From Oikopleura dioica (lineage: Eukaryota > Animalia > Chordata): a stretch of DNA of 64,000 nt. The stretch lies in assembly GCA_907165135.1 (NCBI GenBank), contig OU015569.1, positions 7,502,001 through 7,566,000 of the forward strand, written 5' to 3'. Made by a program: the position numbers and the translations under genes. This document shows, piece after piece, positions 9,268 through 17,967 of this stretch; position 1 is the first letter of the stretch, and each line of letters starts with the position of its first letter. A model generated the notes under the pieces. The model ran no database searches and was not told the DNA's origin. It saw nothing but the letters and a program-made list of their open reading frames with translations.

Positions 9268-11130
9268 TTAGACTTCATCGTTAAAAGGATAGAATTTTGA
9301 AAGCTTGGCAATCCATTTGTGCGAGTAGAATCGCAAGTTACAGTCGAAACTAAGAAGTTTGTTCATGACTTCTTCTCCTAGCGGCTGCATTGAAAGGGCC
9401 TCGAAATTCTCGCGAATGTGGATGGAATTCGACGACTTCGGAATTGGAATAATGCCTCGTTCTATGAAAGTAGTGTGGAGCAGTCGAATACGAAAATTAC
9501 CTATGTGAAATCGGAGAAGAAGTTTAACTGGACTCGTCTCGAGCTGTGAAGCCAACTTGGAGAGCTGAGGATCATCGCGCAAATGACGATCATCCCTTTT
9601 TACTCTCGTTTCGCCAATAGGATGGAACGCTAATATTTTTTTATTCGTCTCATTCACCTTATAGAAAAGTTTAATTTTCTTACCCATTAGTGGGATGTTA
9701 AGTTTCTGGCAAAATAAATTCAGTTTTTGATTGTTGAAATAAAGCTGACACGAGGCTAAAAAAACAATATTTGCCATGCATCTACTTAGATTGATTATTA
9801 ATTAATCTTTTTTAGCCTTGCATGAGATTCAATTTGGTTCAGGACGGGTTTTATTCGGCACGACTTCATAAGAGTTTGATTAATTTCTCCCTTATCGATG
9901 GCGATCGCACATATTCCCTTACTTCTTTAACCCCTATAAACAAAGTGTACAATTTTTGTCGATTTCGGGTTATTATCGCCTGCCAAACAGAACTTGTAAA
10001 TCGGAACGATCTGAAAACTTAAATGAGTATTTGCACACGCATTACGGACCTCCCTAAAAAGTTTCAGCCTGATAAGACCCACGAGTACTGCGTGAGCACC
10101 GTTTTTCTCACCTCCACCTGCGCGCTTCAAAGGAACAAAAAATTCTTTTTATCTTTTAGACGTCTCTGAGCTATTGTTTTTAACTTATTTACAGGTTTTT
10201 AAGTATGGAGAATTCGAATCTGGGATCTTTGAAAAGATTGGATCAAGATTTTTAATAATTCCGACATAATTAATTATATAAGAAAGACAAATTCTAGTGC
10301 GTAGTATAGGTTTTTTAGAAAATCTAAAAGTGCAGTTTGAAAGAAAATGTTCGTTTATGTTTAATCTGTGATTTTCAGGAGATTATCTCAAGAGGAAGGC
10401 CAAATCGACAAAAATTGTACACTTCGTCTAAGGGGGTTCTTTAGACTGCTTCGCTTATAGGGGTTAACTATGAGACCCTTTCTTTATCAAATCTTCAAGC
10501 ATTTTCCCCGAAAAGTTGCACACTGCGATAGATTTCGCAAGTCCAAGATCGACACATCTTTCCATTTCTTTCCACGTATCGAGAATATCGACTTCTTCTA
10601 CGATTGCTCCGAACTGATCTTCCTTTGCTTCGCACGAAATAACCTCATCATCCTTGTTCAAAAAGTTTTAAGATGTTCCATAAAGCGAACGATCTTACTT
10701 TTGGCACAAACGCCCATGGAGCATGGATCATCCAGCAGTCTATATAATCCAAGTTAAGGTCAGAAAGAGATTTCTTCAAAGCAGGAATCACTCGTGCAGG
10801 TCGATGGTCAGTGTGGTAGAGCTTCGAGGTCACAAAAAGATCTTCCCGCTTTATGCCAGCTTCCATGAGGCCCGTAGCGATACCCTTGCCAACTCCAACC
10901 TCGTTAGCATATTTTGGCGCTGCATCAATGAGTCTGTATCCCACTTTTATAGCCTCGGCTACAGCAAATTCCATCTCATCCGAAGAAGCGAAGCAGGTTC
11001 CGAATCCTTTCTGTGGTTATTAACAATGTACTGTTTGCACGTAAAAGCCCTTGCTTTATGCAAGTTTGATTAACCAGATCCCGATTAGGGGGACTTTCCT
11101 GCCATCAGCTAACGCTATACTTTCTCTCAT
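9268..11130 (-). CDS. Aldo-keto reductase (AKR1-like)
   Basis: MRESIALADGRKVPLIG|FGT start. Catalytic tetrad IDAA(D), KY(Y), TSKL(K), MIH(H); KSIAVCNFS; IKPVLNQIESH; RGIIPIPKSS; YPFNDEV C-terminus. Confidence 0.95.
9931..10463. mobile_element. 533-bp non-autonomous piggyBac-type MITE in an AKR intron
   Basis: TTAA duplication at 9927-9930 and 10464-10467. Terminal IR CCCCTATAA; 23-bp subterminal IR AAGTGTACAATTTTTGTCGATTT at 9943-9965 and 10402-10424, with spacers of 3 and 30 bp. Confidence 0.92.
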
Positions 11131-11421
11131 GCTAAATATTTAATGAAAAATGATATTCATTCAGCAGTTTTTTTCGGCAAAAGGGAAACATCGTACCCCA
11201 AAGGCAAGCCATATTGTAAACAACTGCTAACTAAATTAGTTTTGTGATCATGTATTACAGAAAACTTGATTGAACTGGTAGGAATTGACTGATTTGTACA
11301 GTGTGAGGGATACTTTAATCAGGACATGAAGTTTGCGTTGAACTTGTCCGCGATCAGCATTAATAGTTTTCTATGGGAGCCAAATAGATCCTTAACAATT
11401 AGTTACGTTTTTAAGTAGCTG

Positions 11422-14400
11422 TCAGTCAACCTGATCTCTCAGTTCAGCCCAAACGGCGGAATTTTTGGCCAGTTTCAGGTTGTCCAAAACGCCCTCTTCG
11501 TCATGAAAGTGAATAGCAATCGTCTCCATCCAAGCGTTGTCTGTTGCCCTTACATCATCAACCATTCCTGGGAAATGGTTAGTATCCACTTATAAACACC
11601 TCTCACCTTTATGAATAACATCTGCATCAGTGTAATTGAAGAATTTATTGAGCACCTCCTCTGTTGCTTTGTCTTGCTTCCCGAAAACCTTCTCCTCCAT
11701 GATCCGCGAAATGCATGCCCCTGACACGAAGACTCGGTCATCTTCTGCGGCTTCAAACTCGAATTGCCTAACCATCCCTCCTGGAAGACAATTTAGAAAT
11801 ATTCGAATGGTGTAAAACTGGAACCTGGAATGGCCCATTCGCCGGTGTTCCGCTGGACGGCGACCCATTCCAACACACTTGTTGCTCCCTTCCTCCACCT
11901 TGTTATGATTGGATCGACTGCATGGTTTGGTCCCCAGTTTGGCAATTCTCCTAAGTATACACTTTAAAGAAGAGACGGCTGAAAGGGCACGATCTAAGCC
12001 AGTTTAAAGTAAGAGATTTTTAAGCGCGTAAATGCGCAATGAGTCGATCTAAGCTGCGTTTACTGACCTCTTCCTGAGATTCCTGTTCGCCCGATCCGAT
12101 TTCGCGGTAAGTTGTCGTATATTTCGAAATCGCCGTCGTGCGACTTGCGATTTATTCCGCTTTCGCGACTGAACTCGTTGAATGGAAGGGATTCAAGACT
12201 CTTCTTGTCTGAAGGGTCAGCCCAGGAAGCTGTTCCACGGATCATTACTTCATTATTTCAAAAATGGATTCATCAATAATAAATTTTCATCATCTTAAAC
12301 TTTAAAGCTTTATCCAATCCTTTTAGAATACTTTCTTCGGTGAACTCTCGTGGCTTGTAGTCATTGAAAGTAACGTCCCAACTTAATTAGTGTATTATTG
12401 GATGACAGTGCTGAAAAATGACAATGAAATTATTCTTACTTGTATCTGTTTGGTGGGAGAATAAATCGCCTAATGGATGTGTTTCCATACATTTTCTGGC
12501 GCGATTTAGGCCAGCGCCCGGTCGTTGAAATATTTAGTTTCTCCAAACTGTCTATAGAGTCTTCGTTGATGCCCGTCATCTCACGAAGACTCGAGTTACG
12601 GCGAATTCCTACGAAATACATCAGAAGAGAAACTGACACTGTGGCTTACCGTTAGTCGTTATTTGCCCACTGTTAAGTCTATTGTAATTTTGCATATTTT
12701 CCATGGCCCTTTGAAACTTTGCTTGCAAGTCTGATTGTTTTCGGAGAATGGTATCGCACGATTCCATGTATTCAGTCAGTCTCTCTAAGCGCGACTCTAA
12801 ATCGACTTCAAGAACGTATTCTCTGTTCCGAACAACGGTCTCTGTTGCCCATGACTCGAAGATTTTCAGCTCATCTTGCGTTGTCTCATCGTAAGATTGA
12901 TTCTCGACCACAAGTCTTGTTTCAGATAGAGGGCTGTTGGTTGATAAGTGATATGTCCGGAAAGGCCGTTTTCCTCGACGCAGACGCTTTTTAATCAGAA
13001 TCAGGAATATAAATGCATATTCTTAAGTACCTGAGCTACAGTATTGAAGTTATCTTTAACACTGTTCTGTCGACCAAAGAAGAAATTATAAAGGTATCTC
13101 AGACCGCTGTAAAAATGTCCAATAATAATCAGAGGAGGAGCCAGTGGGGGTCTGTAGTAATATTCCCTTATGTATGTGTATCGATAAAATTTCCAAATTT
13201 TCTGCGAGTTTGCTTGAATTTTCTCAAATGTGTTTGAAAACAAGGCAATCAGCAGATTGATGAGCAATACGTTCACCATGAGCATGTAGACCCAATTCAT
13301 TATATCAACCGTGAAATGCTGCCTTGGGCATCGCTCAGGATCATCTAGGCCTGTTATGTTCACAAAACAGTTATCGCCATCTGTCGGTTTGTCTTCGAAG
13401 CTAAAAATATTGTCACACTTTCGCTTCGTATTTAATCAATACCTGTATGTCGTTCGCTCTCCTATGAATACTTCGCCGAATATTTGAAAGCATGGTGTAA
13501 AAAGTACGTTATAAATGATTTCACTGACTCGCCACTCGTTTGGATATAGAATTGCAGTTGACCCGATCCCATACGATAAAATAAATATGGCTAAGATGTA
13601 AATAAATTCCAACATGTCTTTGAGCATCGTCGTGACCATCAAAACTCTAAATCGACGTTAGTTCATTCCAAATTATTGCATTTGAAATAACCGTGGACCA
13701 AGTCTTCTGGAAATCGAGTAGAAGTTCATTGTTCGCAAGCACAAGGTGATAAAGCTGAAAGAATACAAAATGTGTCCATGAAAGAAATCGCCATCAGTTA
13801 TCGAAGGACAGTTATCCTTTTGGATGTGGAATGATCGCTCGTCTTTGAATTTTACTCCGACGCCGATGAAAAAGGAAATATACGCTAGGCAGTCCATTTT
13901 GTTGTAAAGATCGGAGAACCATGTCTTCAGTTTGTCTTTCTTTCCGGGCTCGTAATAAATCTTATCTTTTTAGTGATAACTTCCTTACATAGACTTACTT
14001 GTCGAGCTTCTTCGATAACAAGAGTTCCGGTCCAAGCAATGAGCACCCATTCTAGCCAGTGTGGATCGTAACAAAAGCGTGACAGAATAACTGCGGCAAA
14101 GACGAAAAGATAAACGAAGAAAAATACAATATTGTAGACGAAAACTGAGAACGGAGCTTGAAATGTCCAGAGATATTTTCGCCGCCAGGATATTTGTTCG
14201 TCTTTTGCAGAAAGGTCGAATGTTATAATTCGAGCTGGAAGAAATGGCAAAAATGGCAGAGCAAGACAAATAAGAACTTGTCGATATGGCTGGTCGAGAT
14301 GAATATTTCCTCGCCAGATCATAGATAACAGTTCCTGTACTCCAACAAGAGCCACGAAATCACGACACTTGCCACTCACTGCTAATTCTAAGCATGTTGA

Positions 14401-17090
14401 GTTTCCCCAACTTGGTTGAACGCGACTCAAAAGCTTGTATGACTAGTACGGGCTAAAAATCTGATGGGTTTTGAATTAGTAATCCTTATCTTTTTTAATT
14501 TTAGCCATGCCTTGCTCCTGTCGTTTTTGTAGGACTCAAGGAATACATCGACAGCTAATTGCTGGTACTCGTGGGACTCTTGAGTGTACCGCTGCACGAC
14601 ATCTGTATCTCTATCGTCGAGTTTGGAAGCTCTTTTAGAAAGAACGGATGCAGCGAGAGCAAAAGTCAACCCCTCACTTGAATTGGACCAAATAACTCGC
14701 GCCATTTCAACTCGTTTAAATATAAGGCACCAAAGAAACAAGTCTCGAAATGGGTCCAAGCATTGATCTTCTAATATTGAGTATTCGACGGCTCTTCTTT
14801 CATAAATGGAATTCCAAGCCTTGCCTAATAGTTTGCTCTCGCAATAAGCAAGATTATCAAACAAGAACAACTTGCGTGGCATCGCTGAAGTTCTCTTGAA
14901 GTCAAGGACATTCGAGCCATTATTATTGTTGTTGAATTCAGTGAGGCTTTTTATCCAACGGTTAAATTTATCATAGTCTTCTCCTACAATGTTCTTCTTC
15001 AAGCAAAGTTCATAAAAGAACGACCTTCCTCCTGTGGAAGAAAAATCCTGTTCGAGCCCCTTGACATACATCTCCACGAGTCTCTTGTTCGTCATAAAAG
15101 AACTGATGTTGATATATGACGAGTCTACGAGTAATTTAACAAAGTCAACTCTATTTCCAAGAAGAGCTTCCATCATCAGTTCATTTGCTTCAGAGTCCTT
15201 TATGTTTTCAGTCGACTTCGCGATGCGATCCTTCGCGAGCTCAATTTGATTTAGACGCATGCAGAGTTTTATTTGTTGAATAAGATCATCTTTCTGAAGA
15301 TTATTCATCAACGCTCCAAGAATCGAGTGCTCTAATCGAGTGCTTCTTTGATTGTGGTAGAATACTTCGATGAGGTCTTGCTGTGAAAGTACAATCTGAA
15401 AAAAGTGATGTTCATGGGTCATGTTGAAAAGGGCACCTGGAGATTTTCTTCCCACTGCCTGGTCTCTTCTGAATCTTTCGTTTTTATATCAATTTTACGG
15501 AGCCATTCGTGTACTTTCTGCGAGTCAATTTTTTCGAGTGCTTTGTATACTTCATTCATCTCTGATTCGGAGTTCAAGACAGACTCGTCACGGGCACCTT
15601 TTTCGACGAGGAACTCTATGCCAAGACGAATAAGATCAGCCACACCGCCTGATTCAGCGACGACAACACAAGGAATCGACTCACAGAGCATCTCTTTGAC
15701 AGCAAGAAGAGTCCCTAGTTTTCCATTGAAGACAACGCTGATAGTCTGTACATTTTTGGATCCTTGCCGAGGATTAAGAATAGTAAGAGAAAATAAAAAA
15801 AAAACAAAAATTATCTAAATCCTCAGCCTGCTCCACCGCCTTCAGCATTTATGTAGGTCCCGAAAGCCCTTCGAAACTCAAATGTTGACCAGGAATCGAG
15901 TTTTTCTCCTTTGTCTTCACCCTCCACAGCGAGTAAAAATTTGTGATTTGGGTCGAGTGCATGGACGCCTGGTTTTCTTTGCTCAGCTTTATTCGTATTT
16001 ATTTCGATTGGCTTCAAACTGTTCACTGGATTAAGATCAAGCAGGTGATTATCAGGTATCTCGTTCATATTCATGATGCCTATAACTGGCACCGAGTCAC
16101 TATAGGCTGAGCTATACTGTCTTCTCGCTTTGCCGACTTCTTTCATGACTCCAACGTTTAGTCCCCCTGAGACGATCCAAGCCCCTGTGTGCGCCGCCGA
16201 TTCATATAATCCTCTTCTGAACGCGTCCAACAGTGATCCTTGGATCCCGTTGATCAGGTGCGCTGAGCCCGTCACAGAAATAAGCAGGGTTGGCCTCGGA
16301 ATACCCCAATGTTTCAGTAGAAGTTCGTTGTACACACGGCTCATCTTCGAGTCATGCCCCAGCAGGGCGAAATGCGCGAACTGTTGCGAATCACCTTTGA
16401 ACACAACTCGCCCGAATGCTTTCCTTCCTGATTTAAAGTTTTTGTACCAGCGAAGAGCCTCATTTGAATCTTCCTGGCGAATTTTTCTAACATCCTTTTT
16501 AGAGATCAATAAAGCGAATTCAAATTCGGCGGGGACTTTTTTCTAGCCTGCGGCGATTATACAAATAATTCCGATCCCGTTTTCCTGTTCTTTCTTCTGT
16601 ATCTCTTCGATAAAAGTTCTTGGGCCTCCGTTGCGATTTGAATACTGTCTCTGAAACCTCATAGGGTCCCAACCCCTTATCCGGTCTCTTTTTCTTTCAA
16701 TATGTCTGCGCATAACTCATTCTCCCACAAAAATTCTTTTGAGAAAGAAATCCTATTGGTACGTAAAAGGACGCATTTCTGCGTTGCTGAATTTCCGGAG
16801 AATCATAAGGAATGGATTCAAATCGCTTCCTAATGGGCTCGTCGGTCGAGGACTTGGAAATGTTTCGGCATCATGAGTGTGCAACTGCCGGTTGCGAACG
16901 GACTTCCTCATCGCAGCAGGAGAGCTCATCTCTAGAGGTCATGGATGACCGGACCAGGGGTGTGGATTTGGGCACATTCTTTATTCTCCAGTTGCTCGTT
17001 ACTTAGCATTCGCCTTTGTTCCAGCGGCTCGTGTTTGACGATCAGTGCAGACAATGAATCCACCGTCTTCTGTATGGCTTCTTTGGTCAT
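11422..17090 (-). CDS. TRPM2: TRPM2-like cation channel with C-terminal NUDT9-H domain
   Basis: MHR/SLOG ([14 protein letters not shown]...[18 protein letters not shown]); [10 protein letters not shown]; [10 protein letters not shown]; S2 IEEARQ and S3 YNKMD Ca2+ site; pore FQIFGEVF; S6 [13 protein letters not shown]; NUDT9-[10 protein letters not shown]|[18 protein letters not shown] and TDNAWMET. The start at 17090 is inferred. Confidence 0.95.
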
Positions 17091-17967
17091 CGTAACAAAA
17101 GGGATCTAATTATTAGAATGTGTTTAAAGAATGAGTAAATTTCAGAATTCGTTTTTAGGGAAGGAATTTCGTCTCATCGCATTAAAAAACGAGCTTGTGA
17201 CGTTGGTTATAATTAATTATTTGGGGAAAAGCGTATGGTATATTTATGGATCAGATCAAGCGTAATTATCTGGGAAAGAGCATACACGCATCTTCTGTTT
17301 ATTCGATCAGACTTTCATCGAGTTCTTTGAAGAAAGGCACCGATCCGTTGCCAAAAAAGCTTGTGATTAGTGACGTTCTCAGTCTTTCCCATGATTATTT
17401 CAACACTCCGTAACAAAGGATTTTGTAATTAATTCGCAAGCACGAGTAGTCCAAATCGAGGGCATTTATAACTTAACTGTCGTTTTGCGATGAAAGTTGA
17501 ATTTTACGTACGAGTCTCCGGAAAGGCTAATTTTCAAGTTACGAAGCTCAAGCTGTCCACTGGGGCGGTGAGGTACCCGCAAAATGTCTCGGGCCTTCGG
17601 AAAGGGACTTTGAACAAAAAGAAACACGTGGGCCACTTCGAACACTTCTCATTCCTGTGTAAGAAGTTGAATTTCTAATAAAGACACTGCTTCTACTCTG
17701 CGAAGCCGTGTCTCTGTAGCTCATTTTCACGGCACAGATCTTTTTTATCATCCCTTTGGAATACGCAGTGTATGACTTTACAAAATGCTGCATTTGCCTA
17801 ATCACATTTGAAATGTTCTGAATGTCCTTAATCGGCAAGACCGATCCACCATGCGGTGTTCTATGCAAATAGGGGATTGTTGACAAGGAATATTTATTTG
17901 ACCTCAATCAGCCCGTCCTTAAACGATTGTTGAGCATAATCAGAATCATTTTGCTTCTTCGACTTTG

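What the first reader, a model, noticed from the sequence alone, without database searches (positions are those of the whole stretch)
11600..13500. TRPM2-like channel with an ancestral-type pore but a degenerate Nudix box
The pore reads [11 protein letters not shown], like the stable invertebrate xGELF filter rather than the shortened vertebrate FGQIP. The Nudix box (11689-11706) reads GGMV+insertion...SRIMEEK instead of the catalytic REFxEE, resembling the inactive vertebrate RILRQE. Published work holds that invertebrate TRPM2s are active ADPR-hydrolysing chanzymes and that catalysis and filter stability were lost together in early vertebrates. A tunicate channel uncoupling the two traits would imply independent or stepwise loss.
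Basis: partly seen in the sequence, partly recalled or inferred. Interest (0 to 1): 0.72.

Follow-up and report, generated by a model that had tools for sequence, protein, structure and literature searches.

The report
Tunicate TRPM2 channel, dead-looking Nudix box
A planktonic tunicate's TRPM2-type ion channel keeps the old, stable-looking pore, but its attached ADP-ribose-cleaving domain has lost key catalytic residues while staying under strong selection, which goes against the published view that these two traits were only ever lost together.

Summary
A minus-strand, short-intron gene (about 17100 to 11319) encodes a TRPM2-like channel. It has SLOG/MHR domains, an intact Ca2+ site, the pore [11 protein letters not shown] (13489-13457) and a complete C-terminal NUDT9-H domain.

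The Nudix motif carries a 9-10 residue insertion after GX5E and reads RIMEEK (11706-11689). Three alignments give three registers, and none keeps the Mg-binding first glutamate (srTRPM2 E1386). The four ADPR-contacting residues I checked are all conserved.

The degenerate segment is not decaying. Against a related lineage it shows 2 nonsynonymous versus 19 synonymous differences in 36 codons.

The gene falls in a tunicate plus vertebrate TRPM2 clade. Ascidian orthologues (Styela, Phallusia, Clavelina) have canonical REFxEE. The loss is therefore most simply specific to the larvacean-like lineage and independent of vertebrates.

The uncoupling is not unique. Clavelina paralogues (REFIKK and similar) and gastropod paralogues also combine degenerate boxes with GELF-type pores. 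Papers from 2019 and 2026 describe non-vertebrate boxes as conserved.

Activity, gating and the exact register are untested. The spliced protein could not be folded or searched. Unchecked scan notes report further TRPM loci in this genome, one with a dead-looking Nudix box.

The parts
16546..17105 (-). Tentative 5' exons (N-terminus, including an ENKEC motif). Junctions are not resolved.
   Evidence: Open segments. RNA reads align at 16583-16622. No exon model was built.
15837..16542 (-). Exon for the SLOG / MHR1-2 domain, which holds the N-terminal ADPR site region ([12 protein letters not shown]).
   Evidence: Pfam LSDAT_euk 1.6e-23. Aligned with TRPM2 orthologues. The upstream border is not fixed.
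15437..15762 (-). Exon for the end of MHR2. Both junctions are tentative.
   Evidence: GT-AG candidates chosen by homology. The reading frame stays open.
14511..15395 (-). Exon for MHR3/4. It is followed by a GC-AG intron at 14510-14443.
   Evidence: Pfam TRPM2 domain 1.7e-29. The junction was set by homology to the L005 gene 1 reading frame.
13999..14442 (-). Exon for pre-S1, S1 and S2, with Ca2+-site residues E and Q (IEEARQ).
13692..13960 (-). Exon for S3-S4, with Ca2+-site residues N and D (YNKMD).
13443..13646 (-). Exon for S5, the pore helix and the selectivity filter. [11 protein letters not shown] lies at 13489-13457.
   Evidence: Best solved-structure hit is srTRPM2 8sr7 at about 9e-11, and its shorter construct 8srj at 7e-11. 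Coordinates, alignment.
13031..13400 (-). Exon for the pore loop, S6 and the TRP helix ([13 protein letters not shown], including the E1073 equivalent).
   Evidence: Pfam Ion_trans, weak.
12650..12986 (-). Exon for the post-TRP region (probably rib and pole helices).
   Evidence: The segment is conserved in L001. The helix assignment is by position only.
11825..12608 (-). Four exons (12608-12440, 12381-12320, 12229-12068, 11950-11825) for the linker and the first part of NUDT9-H, up to EWAIPG. They include GPNHAVDP (11933-11910). A GA-AG intron lies at 12319-12230.
   Evidence: Exon borders. NUDT9 1q33 hit at 5e-10. Local HMM match.
11607..11780 (-). Nudix-motif exon: GGMV, GX5E, a variable acid-rich insertion, then the conserved [11 protein letters not shown] segment. 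RIMEEK lies at 11706-11689.
   Evidence: The exon alone has no significant hit among solved structures. pN/pS is about 0.03 over its first 36 codons.
11319..11567 (-). The last two exons (11567-11431 and 11390-11319, stop included): [13 protein letters not shown] ... LFGSHRKLL, the C-terminal part of NUDT9-H.
   Evidence: NUDT9 1q33 hit at 1e-8. Exon borders. The splice 11607|11567 is supported by RNA read ends.

Best explanation
The gene encodes a functional TRPM2-type (TRPM-beta) cation channel of a tunicate. The short introns suggest a larvacean, but that is an inference.

Shown:
- It has the full domain set and an intact transmembrane Ca2+ site.
- Its filter has the ancestral glutamate and phenylalanine and a full-length post-filter turn.
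- Its NUDT9-H domain is complete and under strong purifying selection.

Inferred:
- The channel is opened by ADP-ribose plus Ca2+ through the N-terminal MHR1/2 site, as in the sea-anemone and choanoflagellate channels.
- It conducts Ca2+ well and does not inactivate through filter collapse.
- NUDT9-H still binds ADP-ribose in the chanzyme pose, because the equivalents of srTRPM2 D1330, R1360, D1426 and R1428 are kept.
- It hydrolyses ADP-ribose very poorly or not at all. The Mg-binding glutamate of the Nudix helix (E1386 equivalent) is replaced by Ile or Arg, depending on register, and a 9-10 residue insertion expands the X7 spacer.
- The domain therefore probably acts as a ligand-binding or regulatory module rather than as an enzyme.
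- This state most likely arose within the larvacean-like lineage, independently of the vertebrate loss and without the vertebrate pore changes.
For: Domains and family:
- The local NUDT9-H profile scores 1.5e-70.
- All five Ca2+-site residues are conserved.
- The pore aligns with nv, sr and Styela GELF-LDE, not with FGQIP-GY.

Nudix box:
- R-I-[MV]-E-E-K is conserved in four related sequences (window, L001, L005 gene 1, L009). The preceding 13-14 residues vary in sequence and length.
- No register keeps the E1386 equivalent.
- According to PMC11479946, E1386 and E1390 hold the three Mg2+ ions, and replacing the E1386 equivalent in NUDT9 or NUDT5 costs 3-4 orders of magnitude in catalytic efficiency.
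- According to PMC6461439, RILGEE and REFGKK mutants are inactive.
- The four ADPR-contacting residues are conserved.

Selection and expression:
- Across NUDT9-H, pN is 0.074 against pS of 0.75. In GGMV..KVFGKQ there are 2 nonsynonymous and 19 synonymous differences.
- The reading frame is intact.
- Spliced RNA reads of an orthologue encode [10 protein letters not shown] across the last-but-one junction.

Independent loss:
- The gene lies in a clade with ascidian and vertebrate TRPM2 (support 98* in the quick tree, 97/91* in the careful tree).
- Ascidian orthologues read REFSEE, REFQEE and REFTEE.
Against: - No enzymatic, binding or electrophysiological data exist.
- The register of the box is ambiguous. 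In one register (SRIMEE) two of the three glutamates, including the E1390 equivalent, are kept.
- The insertion is rich in Glu and Asp, which could supply metal ligands.
- The spliced domain could not be folded here.
- The RNA reads come from a divergent lineage (90-95% alike), are few (23), and do not show the Nudix-box exon itself.
- The MHR1/2 arginine equivalent to human R358 is Gly. It is also Gly in amphioxus and in Styela and Clavelina (Gln in Phallusia, Leu in S. rosetta), so this is not informative.
- Unchecked scan notes report several TRPM loci in this genome. One or more could carry a canonical box.
Confidence: 0.6

Rival explanations
1. NUDT9-H is still an ADP-ribose hydrolase. 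It would use a non-canonical metal site made of the two retained glutamates in the SRIMEE register, plus acidic residues of the insertion. The channel would then remain a chanzyme.
For: One MAFFT alignment and the profile alignment of L005 gene 1 place E-E on the last two glutamates of the box. The insertion is acid-rich in all lineages: [17 protein letters not shown] and ESRPVGDD. The substrate-contacting residues are conserved. Strong purifying selection fits an enzyme as well as it fits a sensor.
Against: The E1386 equivalent is missing in every register, and its replacement alone costs 10^3-10^4 in NUDT9 and NUDT5 (PMC11479946). The insertion is not conserved in sequence or length among the relatives, which is unexpected for a catalytic site. 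The box exon has no detectable similarity to any solved Nudix protein.
Confidence: 0.17
2. The degenerate box was inherited from a paralogue that already existed in the common ancestor of tunicates and vertebrates. The larvacean gene would then be the orthologue of vertebrate TRPM2, and ascidians would have kept the other, canonical copy. Catalysis would have been lost before the pore changed.
For: The careful tree joins the larvacean-like clade to the vertebrate clade, with weak support of 75/61.
Against: The quick 106-row tree joins it to ascidians with support 98*. The AU test does not reject that grouping (delta lnL 0.9, p 0.38). The clade sits on a very long stem (1.1-1.3), which is prone to attraction artefacts. 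No indel is shared with vertebrates: the insertion is larvacean-only, and the vertebrate deletion after the box is absent. The Ile depends on the register.
Confidence: 0.1
3. The C-terminal domain is a decaying relic or the gene is a pseudogene, or the odd box is an artefact of a wrong exon model.
For: The box exon has no significant match among solved structures. Two introns have non-GT donors.
Against: The reading frame stays open through 14 exons. pN/pS is far below 1 and is lowest in the box segment. The same exon is conserved at 80% amino-acid identity in a metagenomic relative, and the motif recurs in two more distant ones. There is no alternative canonical box in any frame. Spliced RNA exists.
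Confidence: 0.04

Closest known systems
Invertebrate and choanoflagellate TRPM2 chanzymes (Nematostella nvTRPM2, PDB 6CO7; Salpingoeca srTRPM2, PDB 8SR7)
   Same: The domain order is the same. The Ca2+ site is the same. The filter is G-E-[LV]-F followed by a three-residue turn. The NUDT9-H residues that contact ADPR are the same: D1330, R1360, D1426 and R1428.
   Different: The Nudix helix lacks the Mg-binding E1386 equivalent. The X7 spacer is 9-10 residues longer. The post-filter turn has one acidic residue (IGE) instead of two.
Ascidian TRPM2-like channels (Styela clava P0205, Phallusia mammillata P0217, Clavelina lepadiformis P0220; Ciona savignyi in PMC6461439)
   Same: These are the closest named relatives in the trees. 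Their pore is also of the GELF type.
   Different: They have canonical boxes (REFSEE, REFQEE, REFTEE) and no insertion. The branch to the window's clade is very long.
Clavelina lepadiformis paralogues P0273, P0276 and P0277, and gastropod paralogues (Lottia P0051, Lymnaea P0052)
   Same: They are non-vertebrate TRPM2-like proteins that combine a degenerate box (REFIKK, RKFIKE, RDFIKK, TVFARE, IDFKES) with a GELF-type pore. This is the same uncoupling of the two traits.
   Different: The substitutions are different and there is no insertion. The Clavelina copies are a duplication within Clavelina, sister to its canonical gene, so they are independent events. In P0273 the D1330 equivalent is also lost.
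Vertebrate TRPM2 (human, PDB 6PUO/6MIX)
   Same: The Nudix box is degenerate and lacks the first glutamate (RILRQE). The Ca2+ site is conserved.
   Different: Vertebrates have the FGQIP-GY filter. They have lost the D1330 and R1360 equivalents and have a deletion after the box. The window's protein has none of these changes.
Human NUDT9 ADP-ribose pyrophosphatase (PDB 1Q33)
   Same: It is the best solved-structure match of the two exons that flank the box exon.
   Different: NUDT9 is a free enzyme with REFGEE. The window's box exon does not match it at all at E < 1.

Membership tests
TRPM (melastatin) channels | N-terminal SLOG/MHR region and an MHR3/4 domain | tested here: met
   Pfam LSDAT_euk 1.6e-23 and TRPM2 domain 1.7e-29.
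TRPM (melastatin) channels | Six-TM pore module followed by a TRP helix (WKF motif) | tested here: met
   The pore exon matches TRPM2, 5, 3, 4, 7 and 8 structures. IWKFYRY is present in the model.
TRPM2-like / TRPM-beta channels with NUDT9-H | Complete C-terminal NUDT9-homology domain | tested here: met
   Hits to NUDT9 and to TRPM2 NUDT9-H. A local profile of 60 canonical domains gives 1.5e-70 over positions 3-281 of 281.
TRPM2-like / TRPM-beta channels with NUDT9-H | Phylogenetic placement with TRPM2 orthologues | tested here: met
   In the quick tree the window's clade joins the ascidian genes (98*). In the careful tree it joins ascidian and vertebrate TRPM2 (97/91*). The position inside that clade is unresolved.
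TRPM2-like / TRPM-beta channels with NUDT9-H | Transmembrane Ca2+ site (human E843, Q846, N869, D872, E1073) | tested here: met
   All five aligned positions are identical.
TRPM2-like / TRPM-beta channels with NUDT9-H | Gating by ADP-ribose plus Ca2+ | not testable with these tools
   This needs patch-clamp recording of the expressed channel.
TRPM2 chanzymes (active ADPRase) | Canonical Nudix signature GX5EX7REUXEE with the Mg-binding glutamates | tested here: not met
   G and the X5-E are present. The spacer is about 17 residues rather than 7. The box reads RIMEEK, SRIMEE or RVFVSG depending on the alignment, and the E1386 equivalent is absent in all three. There is no canonical box elsewhere in the window.
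TRPM2 chanzymes (active ADPRase) | Measured ADP-ribose hydrolysis | not testable with these tools
   This needs an enzyme assay on the purified domain.
Vertebrate-type (inactivating) TRPM2 | Filter FGQIP followed by a shortened uncharged doublet | tested here: not met
   The window reads FGEV-F-IGE and aligns with nv, sr and Styela, not with human or frog.

The most novel reading that the evidence does not exclude
The larvacean-type gene is the surviving tunicate orthologue of the vertebrate TRPM2 lineage. It would share with that lineage an ancestral replacement of the Mg-binding glutamate by isoleucine. Catalysis would then have been lost in the common ancestor of tunicates and vertebrates, or in one of two ancestral paralogues, before the pore was destabilised. 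That is a stepwise loss rather than a simultaneous one.
Probability: 0.1. Interest if true: 0.75.

Novelty: new variant of a known kind. Interest (0 to 1): 0.5.

Why it matters
Two papers (eLife 2019, PMC6461439; Mol Biol Evol 2026, PMC13143021) state that non-vertebrate TRPM2/TRPM-beta channels keep the catalytic Nudix residues. They also state that catalysis and pore stability were lost together.

This gene is a natural counter-example: a dead-looking box combined with an ancestral-type pore and a domain that is still strongly constrained. The Clavelina and gastropod paralogues found along the way are further counter-examples.

Together they make two questions directly testable with natural proteins:
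- Are ligand hydrolysis and filter inactivation really alternative shut-off mechanisms?
- What does a non-catalytic NUDT9-H do in a channel gated from the N-terminal site?

The result is sequence-level only. It comes from a fast-evolving lineage, so its weight for vertebrate history is limited.

Tried and rejected
1. My first idea was that an ungapped alignment puts RVFVSG at the box and that there is no insertion. A profile HMM reproduces this for the window and L001. I rejected it as the best reading because that segment is not conserved in L005 gene 1 (DVMVNN) or L009 (VRIKNN), while R-I-[MV]-E-E-K is invariant.
2. I looked for a hidden intron inside the apparent insertion. No in-frame GT-AG of plausible length exists, and the segment is coding and conserved in L001.
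3. A REFTEE string lies at 12350-12333. It sits in the N-terminal cap of NUDT9-H (the YKPxEYT region), is not conserved in L005 or L009, and is not a Nudix box.
4. Solved-structure and Pfam searches with the box exon alone found nothing.
5. The representative-library search did not return this gene's own full-length protein. No referenceable spliced protein was therefore available.
6. RNA reads did not cover the box exon. The 189-base 'skip' at 11634-11824 probably reflects a stretch too divergent to lay, plus the 44-nt intron. It cannot be read as exon skipping.
7. Rfam found nothing in 10900-17300. The conserved intron stretch shows no convincing shared fold.
8. The gene tree could not decide between a larvacean+ascidian and a larvacean+vertebrate grouping.

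Full report
**What is there.** [11 protein letters not shown] is encoded at 13489-13457 and RIMEEK at 11706-11689, preceded by GGMV plus 21 residues at 11781-11707.

**Gene model.**
- I built the exon model from open segments, AG/GT borders and homology to nearly intron-free relatives.
- From 15762 to 11319, fourteen exons join into an open frame of 1245 codons.
- The SLOG exon 16542-15837 lies upstream, and the first exons (17105-16546) are unresolved.
- Introns are 38-117 nt long. One has GA-AG ends (12319-12230) and one has GC-AG ends (14510-14443).
It was used only inside local scripts for alignment, a profile search, substitution counts and trees. There is therefore no structure prediction and no database search of the joined protein.

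**Expression.**
- DNA runs from five studies, including a marine metagenome, hold the stretch.
- I laid 5851 letters on four RNA runs with the same species label. Twenty-three reads from two runs matched, nearly all only 90-95% alike, so they come from a divergent lineage.
- Their overhang at 11609 continues with the sequence of the next exon and encodes [10 protein letters not shown]. This supports the splice 11607|11567.
- The reads do not show the box exon itself.

**Family.**
- Pfam finds the TRPM SLOG domain (1.6e-23) and the TRPM2 MHR3/4 domain (1.7e-29).
- The exons on either side of the box exon match human NUDT9 and the NUDT9-H of sea-anemone, zebrafish, human and choanoflagellate TRPM2.
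- The best solved-structure match of the pore exon is the S. rosetta TRPM2 chanzyme.
- A local profile built from 60 canonical NUDT9-H domains matches the spliced domain end to end at 1.5e-70.
- The window holds only this one TRPM gene.

**Relatives.**
- The word search with the box exon found a metagenomic orthologue at 80% amino-acid identity. Its contig L001 covers window 13255-11062 at about 72% DNA identity.
- The representative search gave more distant ones. L005 carries two tandem TRPM genes: gene 1 has NUDT9-H, and gene 2 (P0005) has none detectable within 5.4 kb. L009 carries one with NUDT9-H.
- In trees of the MHR4-to-TRP region, the window, L005 gene 1 and P0005 form one clade on a long stem. 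In the 106-row quick tree that clade joins the ascidian genes with support 98*. In the 53-row careful tree it joins ascidians plus vertebrate TRPM2 with 97/91*.
- Within that group the order is unresolved. The best careful tree puts the clade with vertebrates (75/61), while holding it with ascidians costs only 0.9 log-likelihood units (AU p = 0.38).
- 'Tunicate' is therefore supported. 'Larvacean' is my inference from intron size, non-GT donors and planktonic metagenome sources, because the organism is coded.

**The Nudix motif.** All four related sequences share GGM[VI]R..E, then 13-14 residues that vary in sequence and length and are rich in Glu/Asp, then an invariant C-[IL]-x-R-I-[MV]-E-E-K-[VI]-[FY]. 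Three registers were obtained against canonical domains:
- SRIMEE on REFxEE (MAFFT, 10 sequences; also the profile alignment of L005 gene 1).
- An ungapped RVFVSG (profile alignment of the window, L001 and L009).

I favour one of the first two, because the conserved segment should be the Nudix helix and the variable one the insertion. In the first register the hydrophobic spacing, the Arg and a following Gly all fit best.

In every register the glutamate equivalent to srTRPM2 E1386 is missing. It becomes Ile, Arg or Val. According to PMC11479946, E1386 and E1390 hold the three Mg2+ ions, and replacing the E1386 equivalent in NUDT9 or NUDT5 costs three to four orders of magnitude. According to PMC6461439, RILGEE and REFGKK are inactive.

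By contrast, the equivalents of D1330, R1360, D1426 and R1428, which contact ADPR in srTRPM2, are conserved in all four sequences. Human TRPM2 has lost the first two.

No canonical box exists in any frame of the window. A REFTEE string at 12350-12333 lies in the N-terminal cap and is a look-alike.

**Pore and Ca2+ site.** The filter keeps Glu and Phe, and the post-filter turn keeps three residues. It aligns with nv, sr and Styela GELF-LDE and not with vertebrate GQIP-GY. The turn is IGE, with one acidic residue rather than two, so 'ancestral' is slightly overstated. All five Ca2+-site residues are identical to human.

**Selection.** Between the window and L001, synonymous sites of NUDT9-H are saturated (pS 0.75) while pN is 0.074. 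In the 36 codons from GGMV to KVFGKQ there are 19 synonymous and 2 nonsynonymous differences. The odd motif is therefore maintained, not decaying.

**Comparison with the literature.**
- PMC6461439 lists Ciona savignyi among its invertebrates and states that all invertebrate boxes are canonical.
- PMC13143021 (2026) repeats that key ADPRase residues are conserved in non-vertebrate TRPM-beta. It counts two joint losses of catalysis and pore stability.
- In the sequences I fetched, Styela, Phallusia and one Clavelina gene are indeed canonical.
- Three Clavelina paralogues read REFIKK, RKFIKE and RDFIKK. Lottia reads TVFARE and Lymnaea IDFKES. All five have GELF-type pores.
- The Clavelina copies are a duplication within Clavelina.
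- Uncoupling of the two traits therefore occurs repeatedly. The window's gene is one clear, strongly constrained case of it.

**Reading.** The most likely reading is a working ADPR/Ca2+-type channel with a stable pore. Its NUDT9-H domain binds ADP-ribose but no longer cleaves it. This state arose within the larvacean-like lineage, independently of vertebrates. Residual non-canonical catalysis, and a shared ancient origin with the vertebrate loss, remain possible. A relic or a model artefact is unlikely.

**Limits.** There are no functional data, the register is not settled, and the RNA evidence is thin and comes from a divergent lineage. Unchecked notes of this scan mention several other TRPM loci in the genome, one with a 'dead-looking Nudix box'. 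I could not test whether any paralogue is canonical.

Noticed in passing
window 11985-12067 (minus strand, inside the intron 12067-11951): About 85 nt at the 5' end of this intron are roughly 83% identical to the L001 relative, while every other intron is unalignable. Reading through gives a stop after two codons (GRGQ*). There is no Rfam hit and no convincing shared fold.
   Followed up: partly
window 12230-12319 and 14443-14510: Two introns have non-GT donors (GA-AG and GC-AG). The GA-AG intron is absent from the L001 relative, whose exon is continuous there.
   Followed up: partly
L005 698-6003 and 7725-12082: There are two tandem TRPM2-like genes on a marine-metagenome contig. The first has a NUDT9-H domain. 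The second (P0005) shows none in the 5.4 kb downstream, where an astacin-like gene follows.
   Followed up: partly
proteins P0273, P0276, P0277 (Clavelina lepadiformis); P0051 (Lottia); P0052 (Lymnaea): These public non-vertebrate TRPM2-like proteins have degenerate Nudix boxes (REFIKK, RKFIKE, RDFIKK, TVFARE, IDFKES) but GELF-type pores. This contradicts the published statement that all non-vertebrate boxes are canonical.
   Followed up: partly
window 11062-11136 and 11190-11223: Two blocks downstream of the stop codon are conserved in the metagenomic relatives (77% and 91%). There is no Rfam match, and their function is unknown.
   Followed up: partly
window 10464-10974 (minus strand): The open reading frames just downstream of the channel gene look like an aldo-keto reductase (motifs such as GYRLIDAA and LDYIDCWMIH). 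This was judged by eye only.
   Followed up: no
proteins P0004 and P0265: These are neighbouring predicted proteins flagged UNVERIFIED_CONTAM in an Acipenser sinensis assembly. P0004 (2355 aa) matches the MHR3/4 exon in seven separate stretches, as if several TRPM copies had been fused into one prediction.
   Followed up: no
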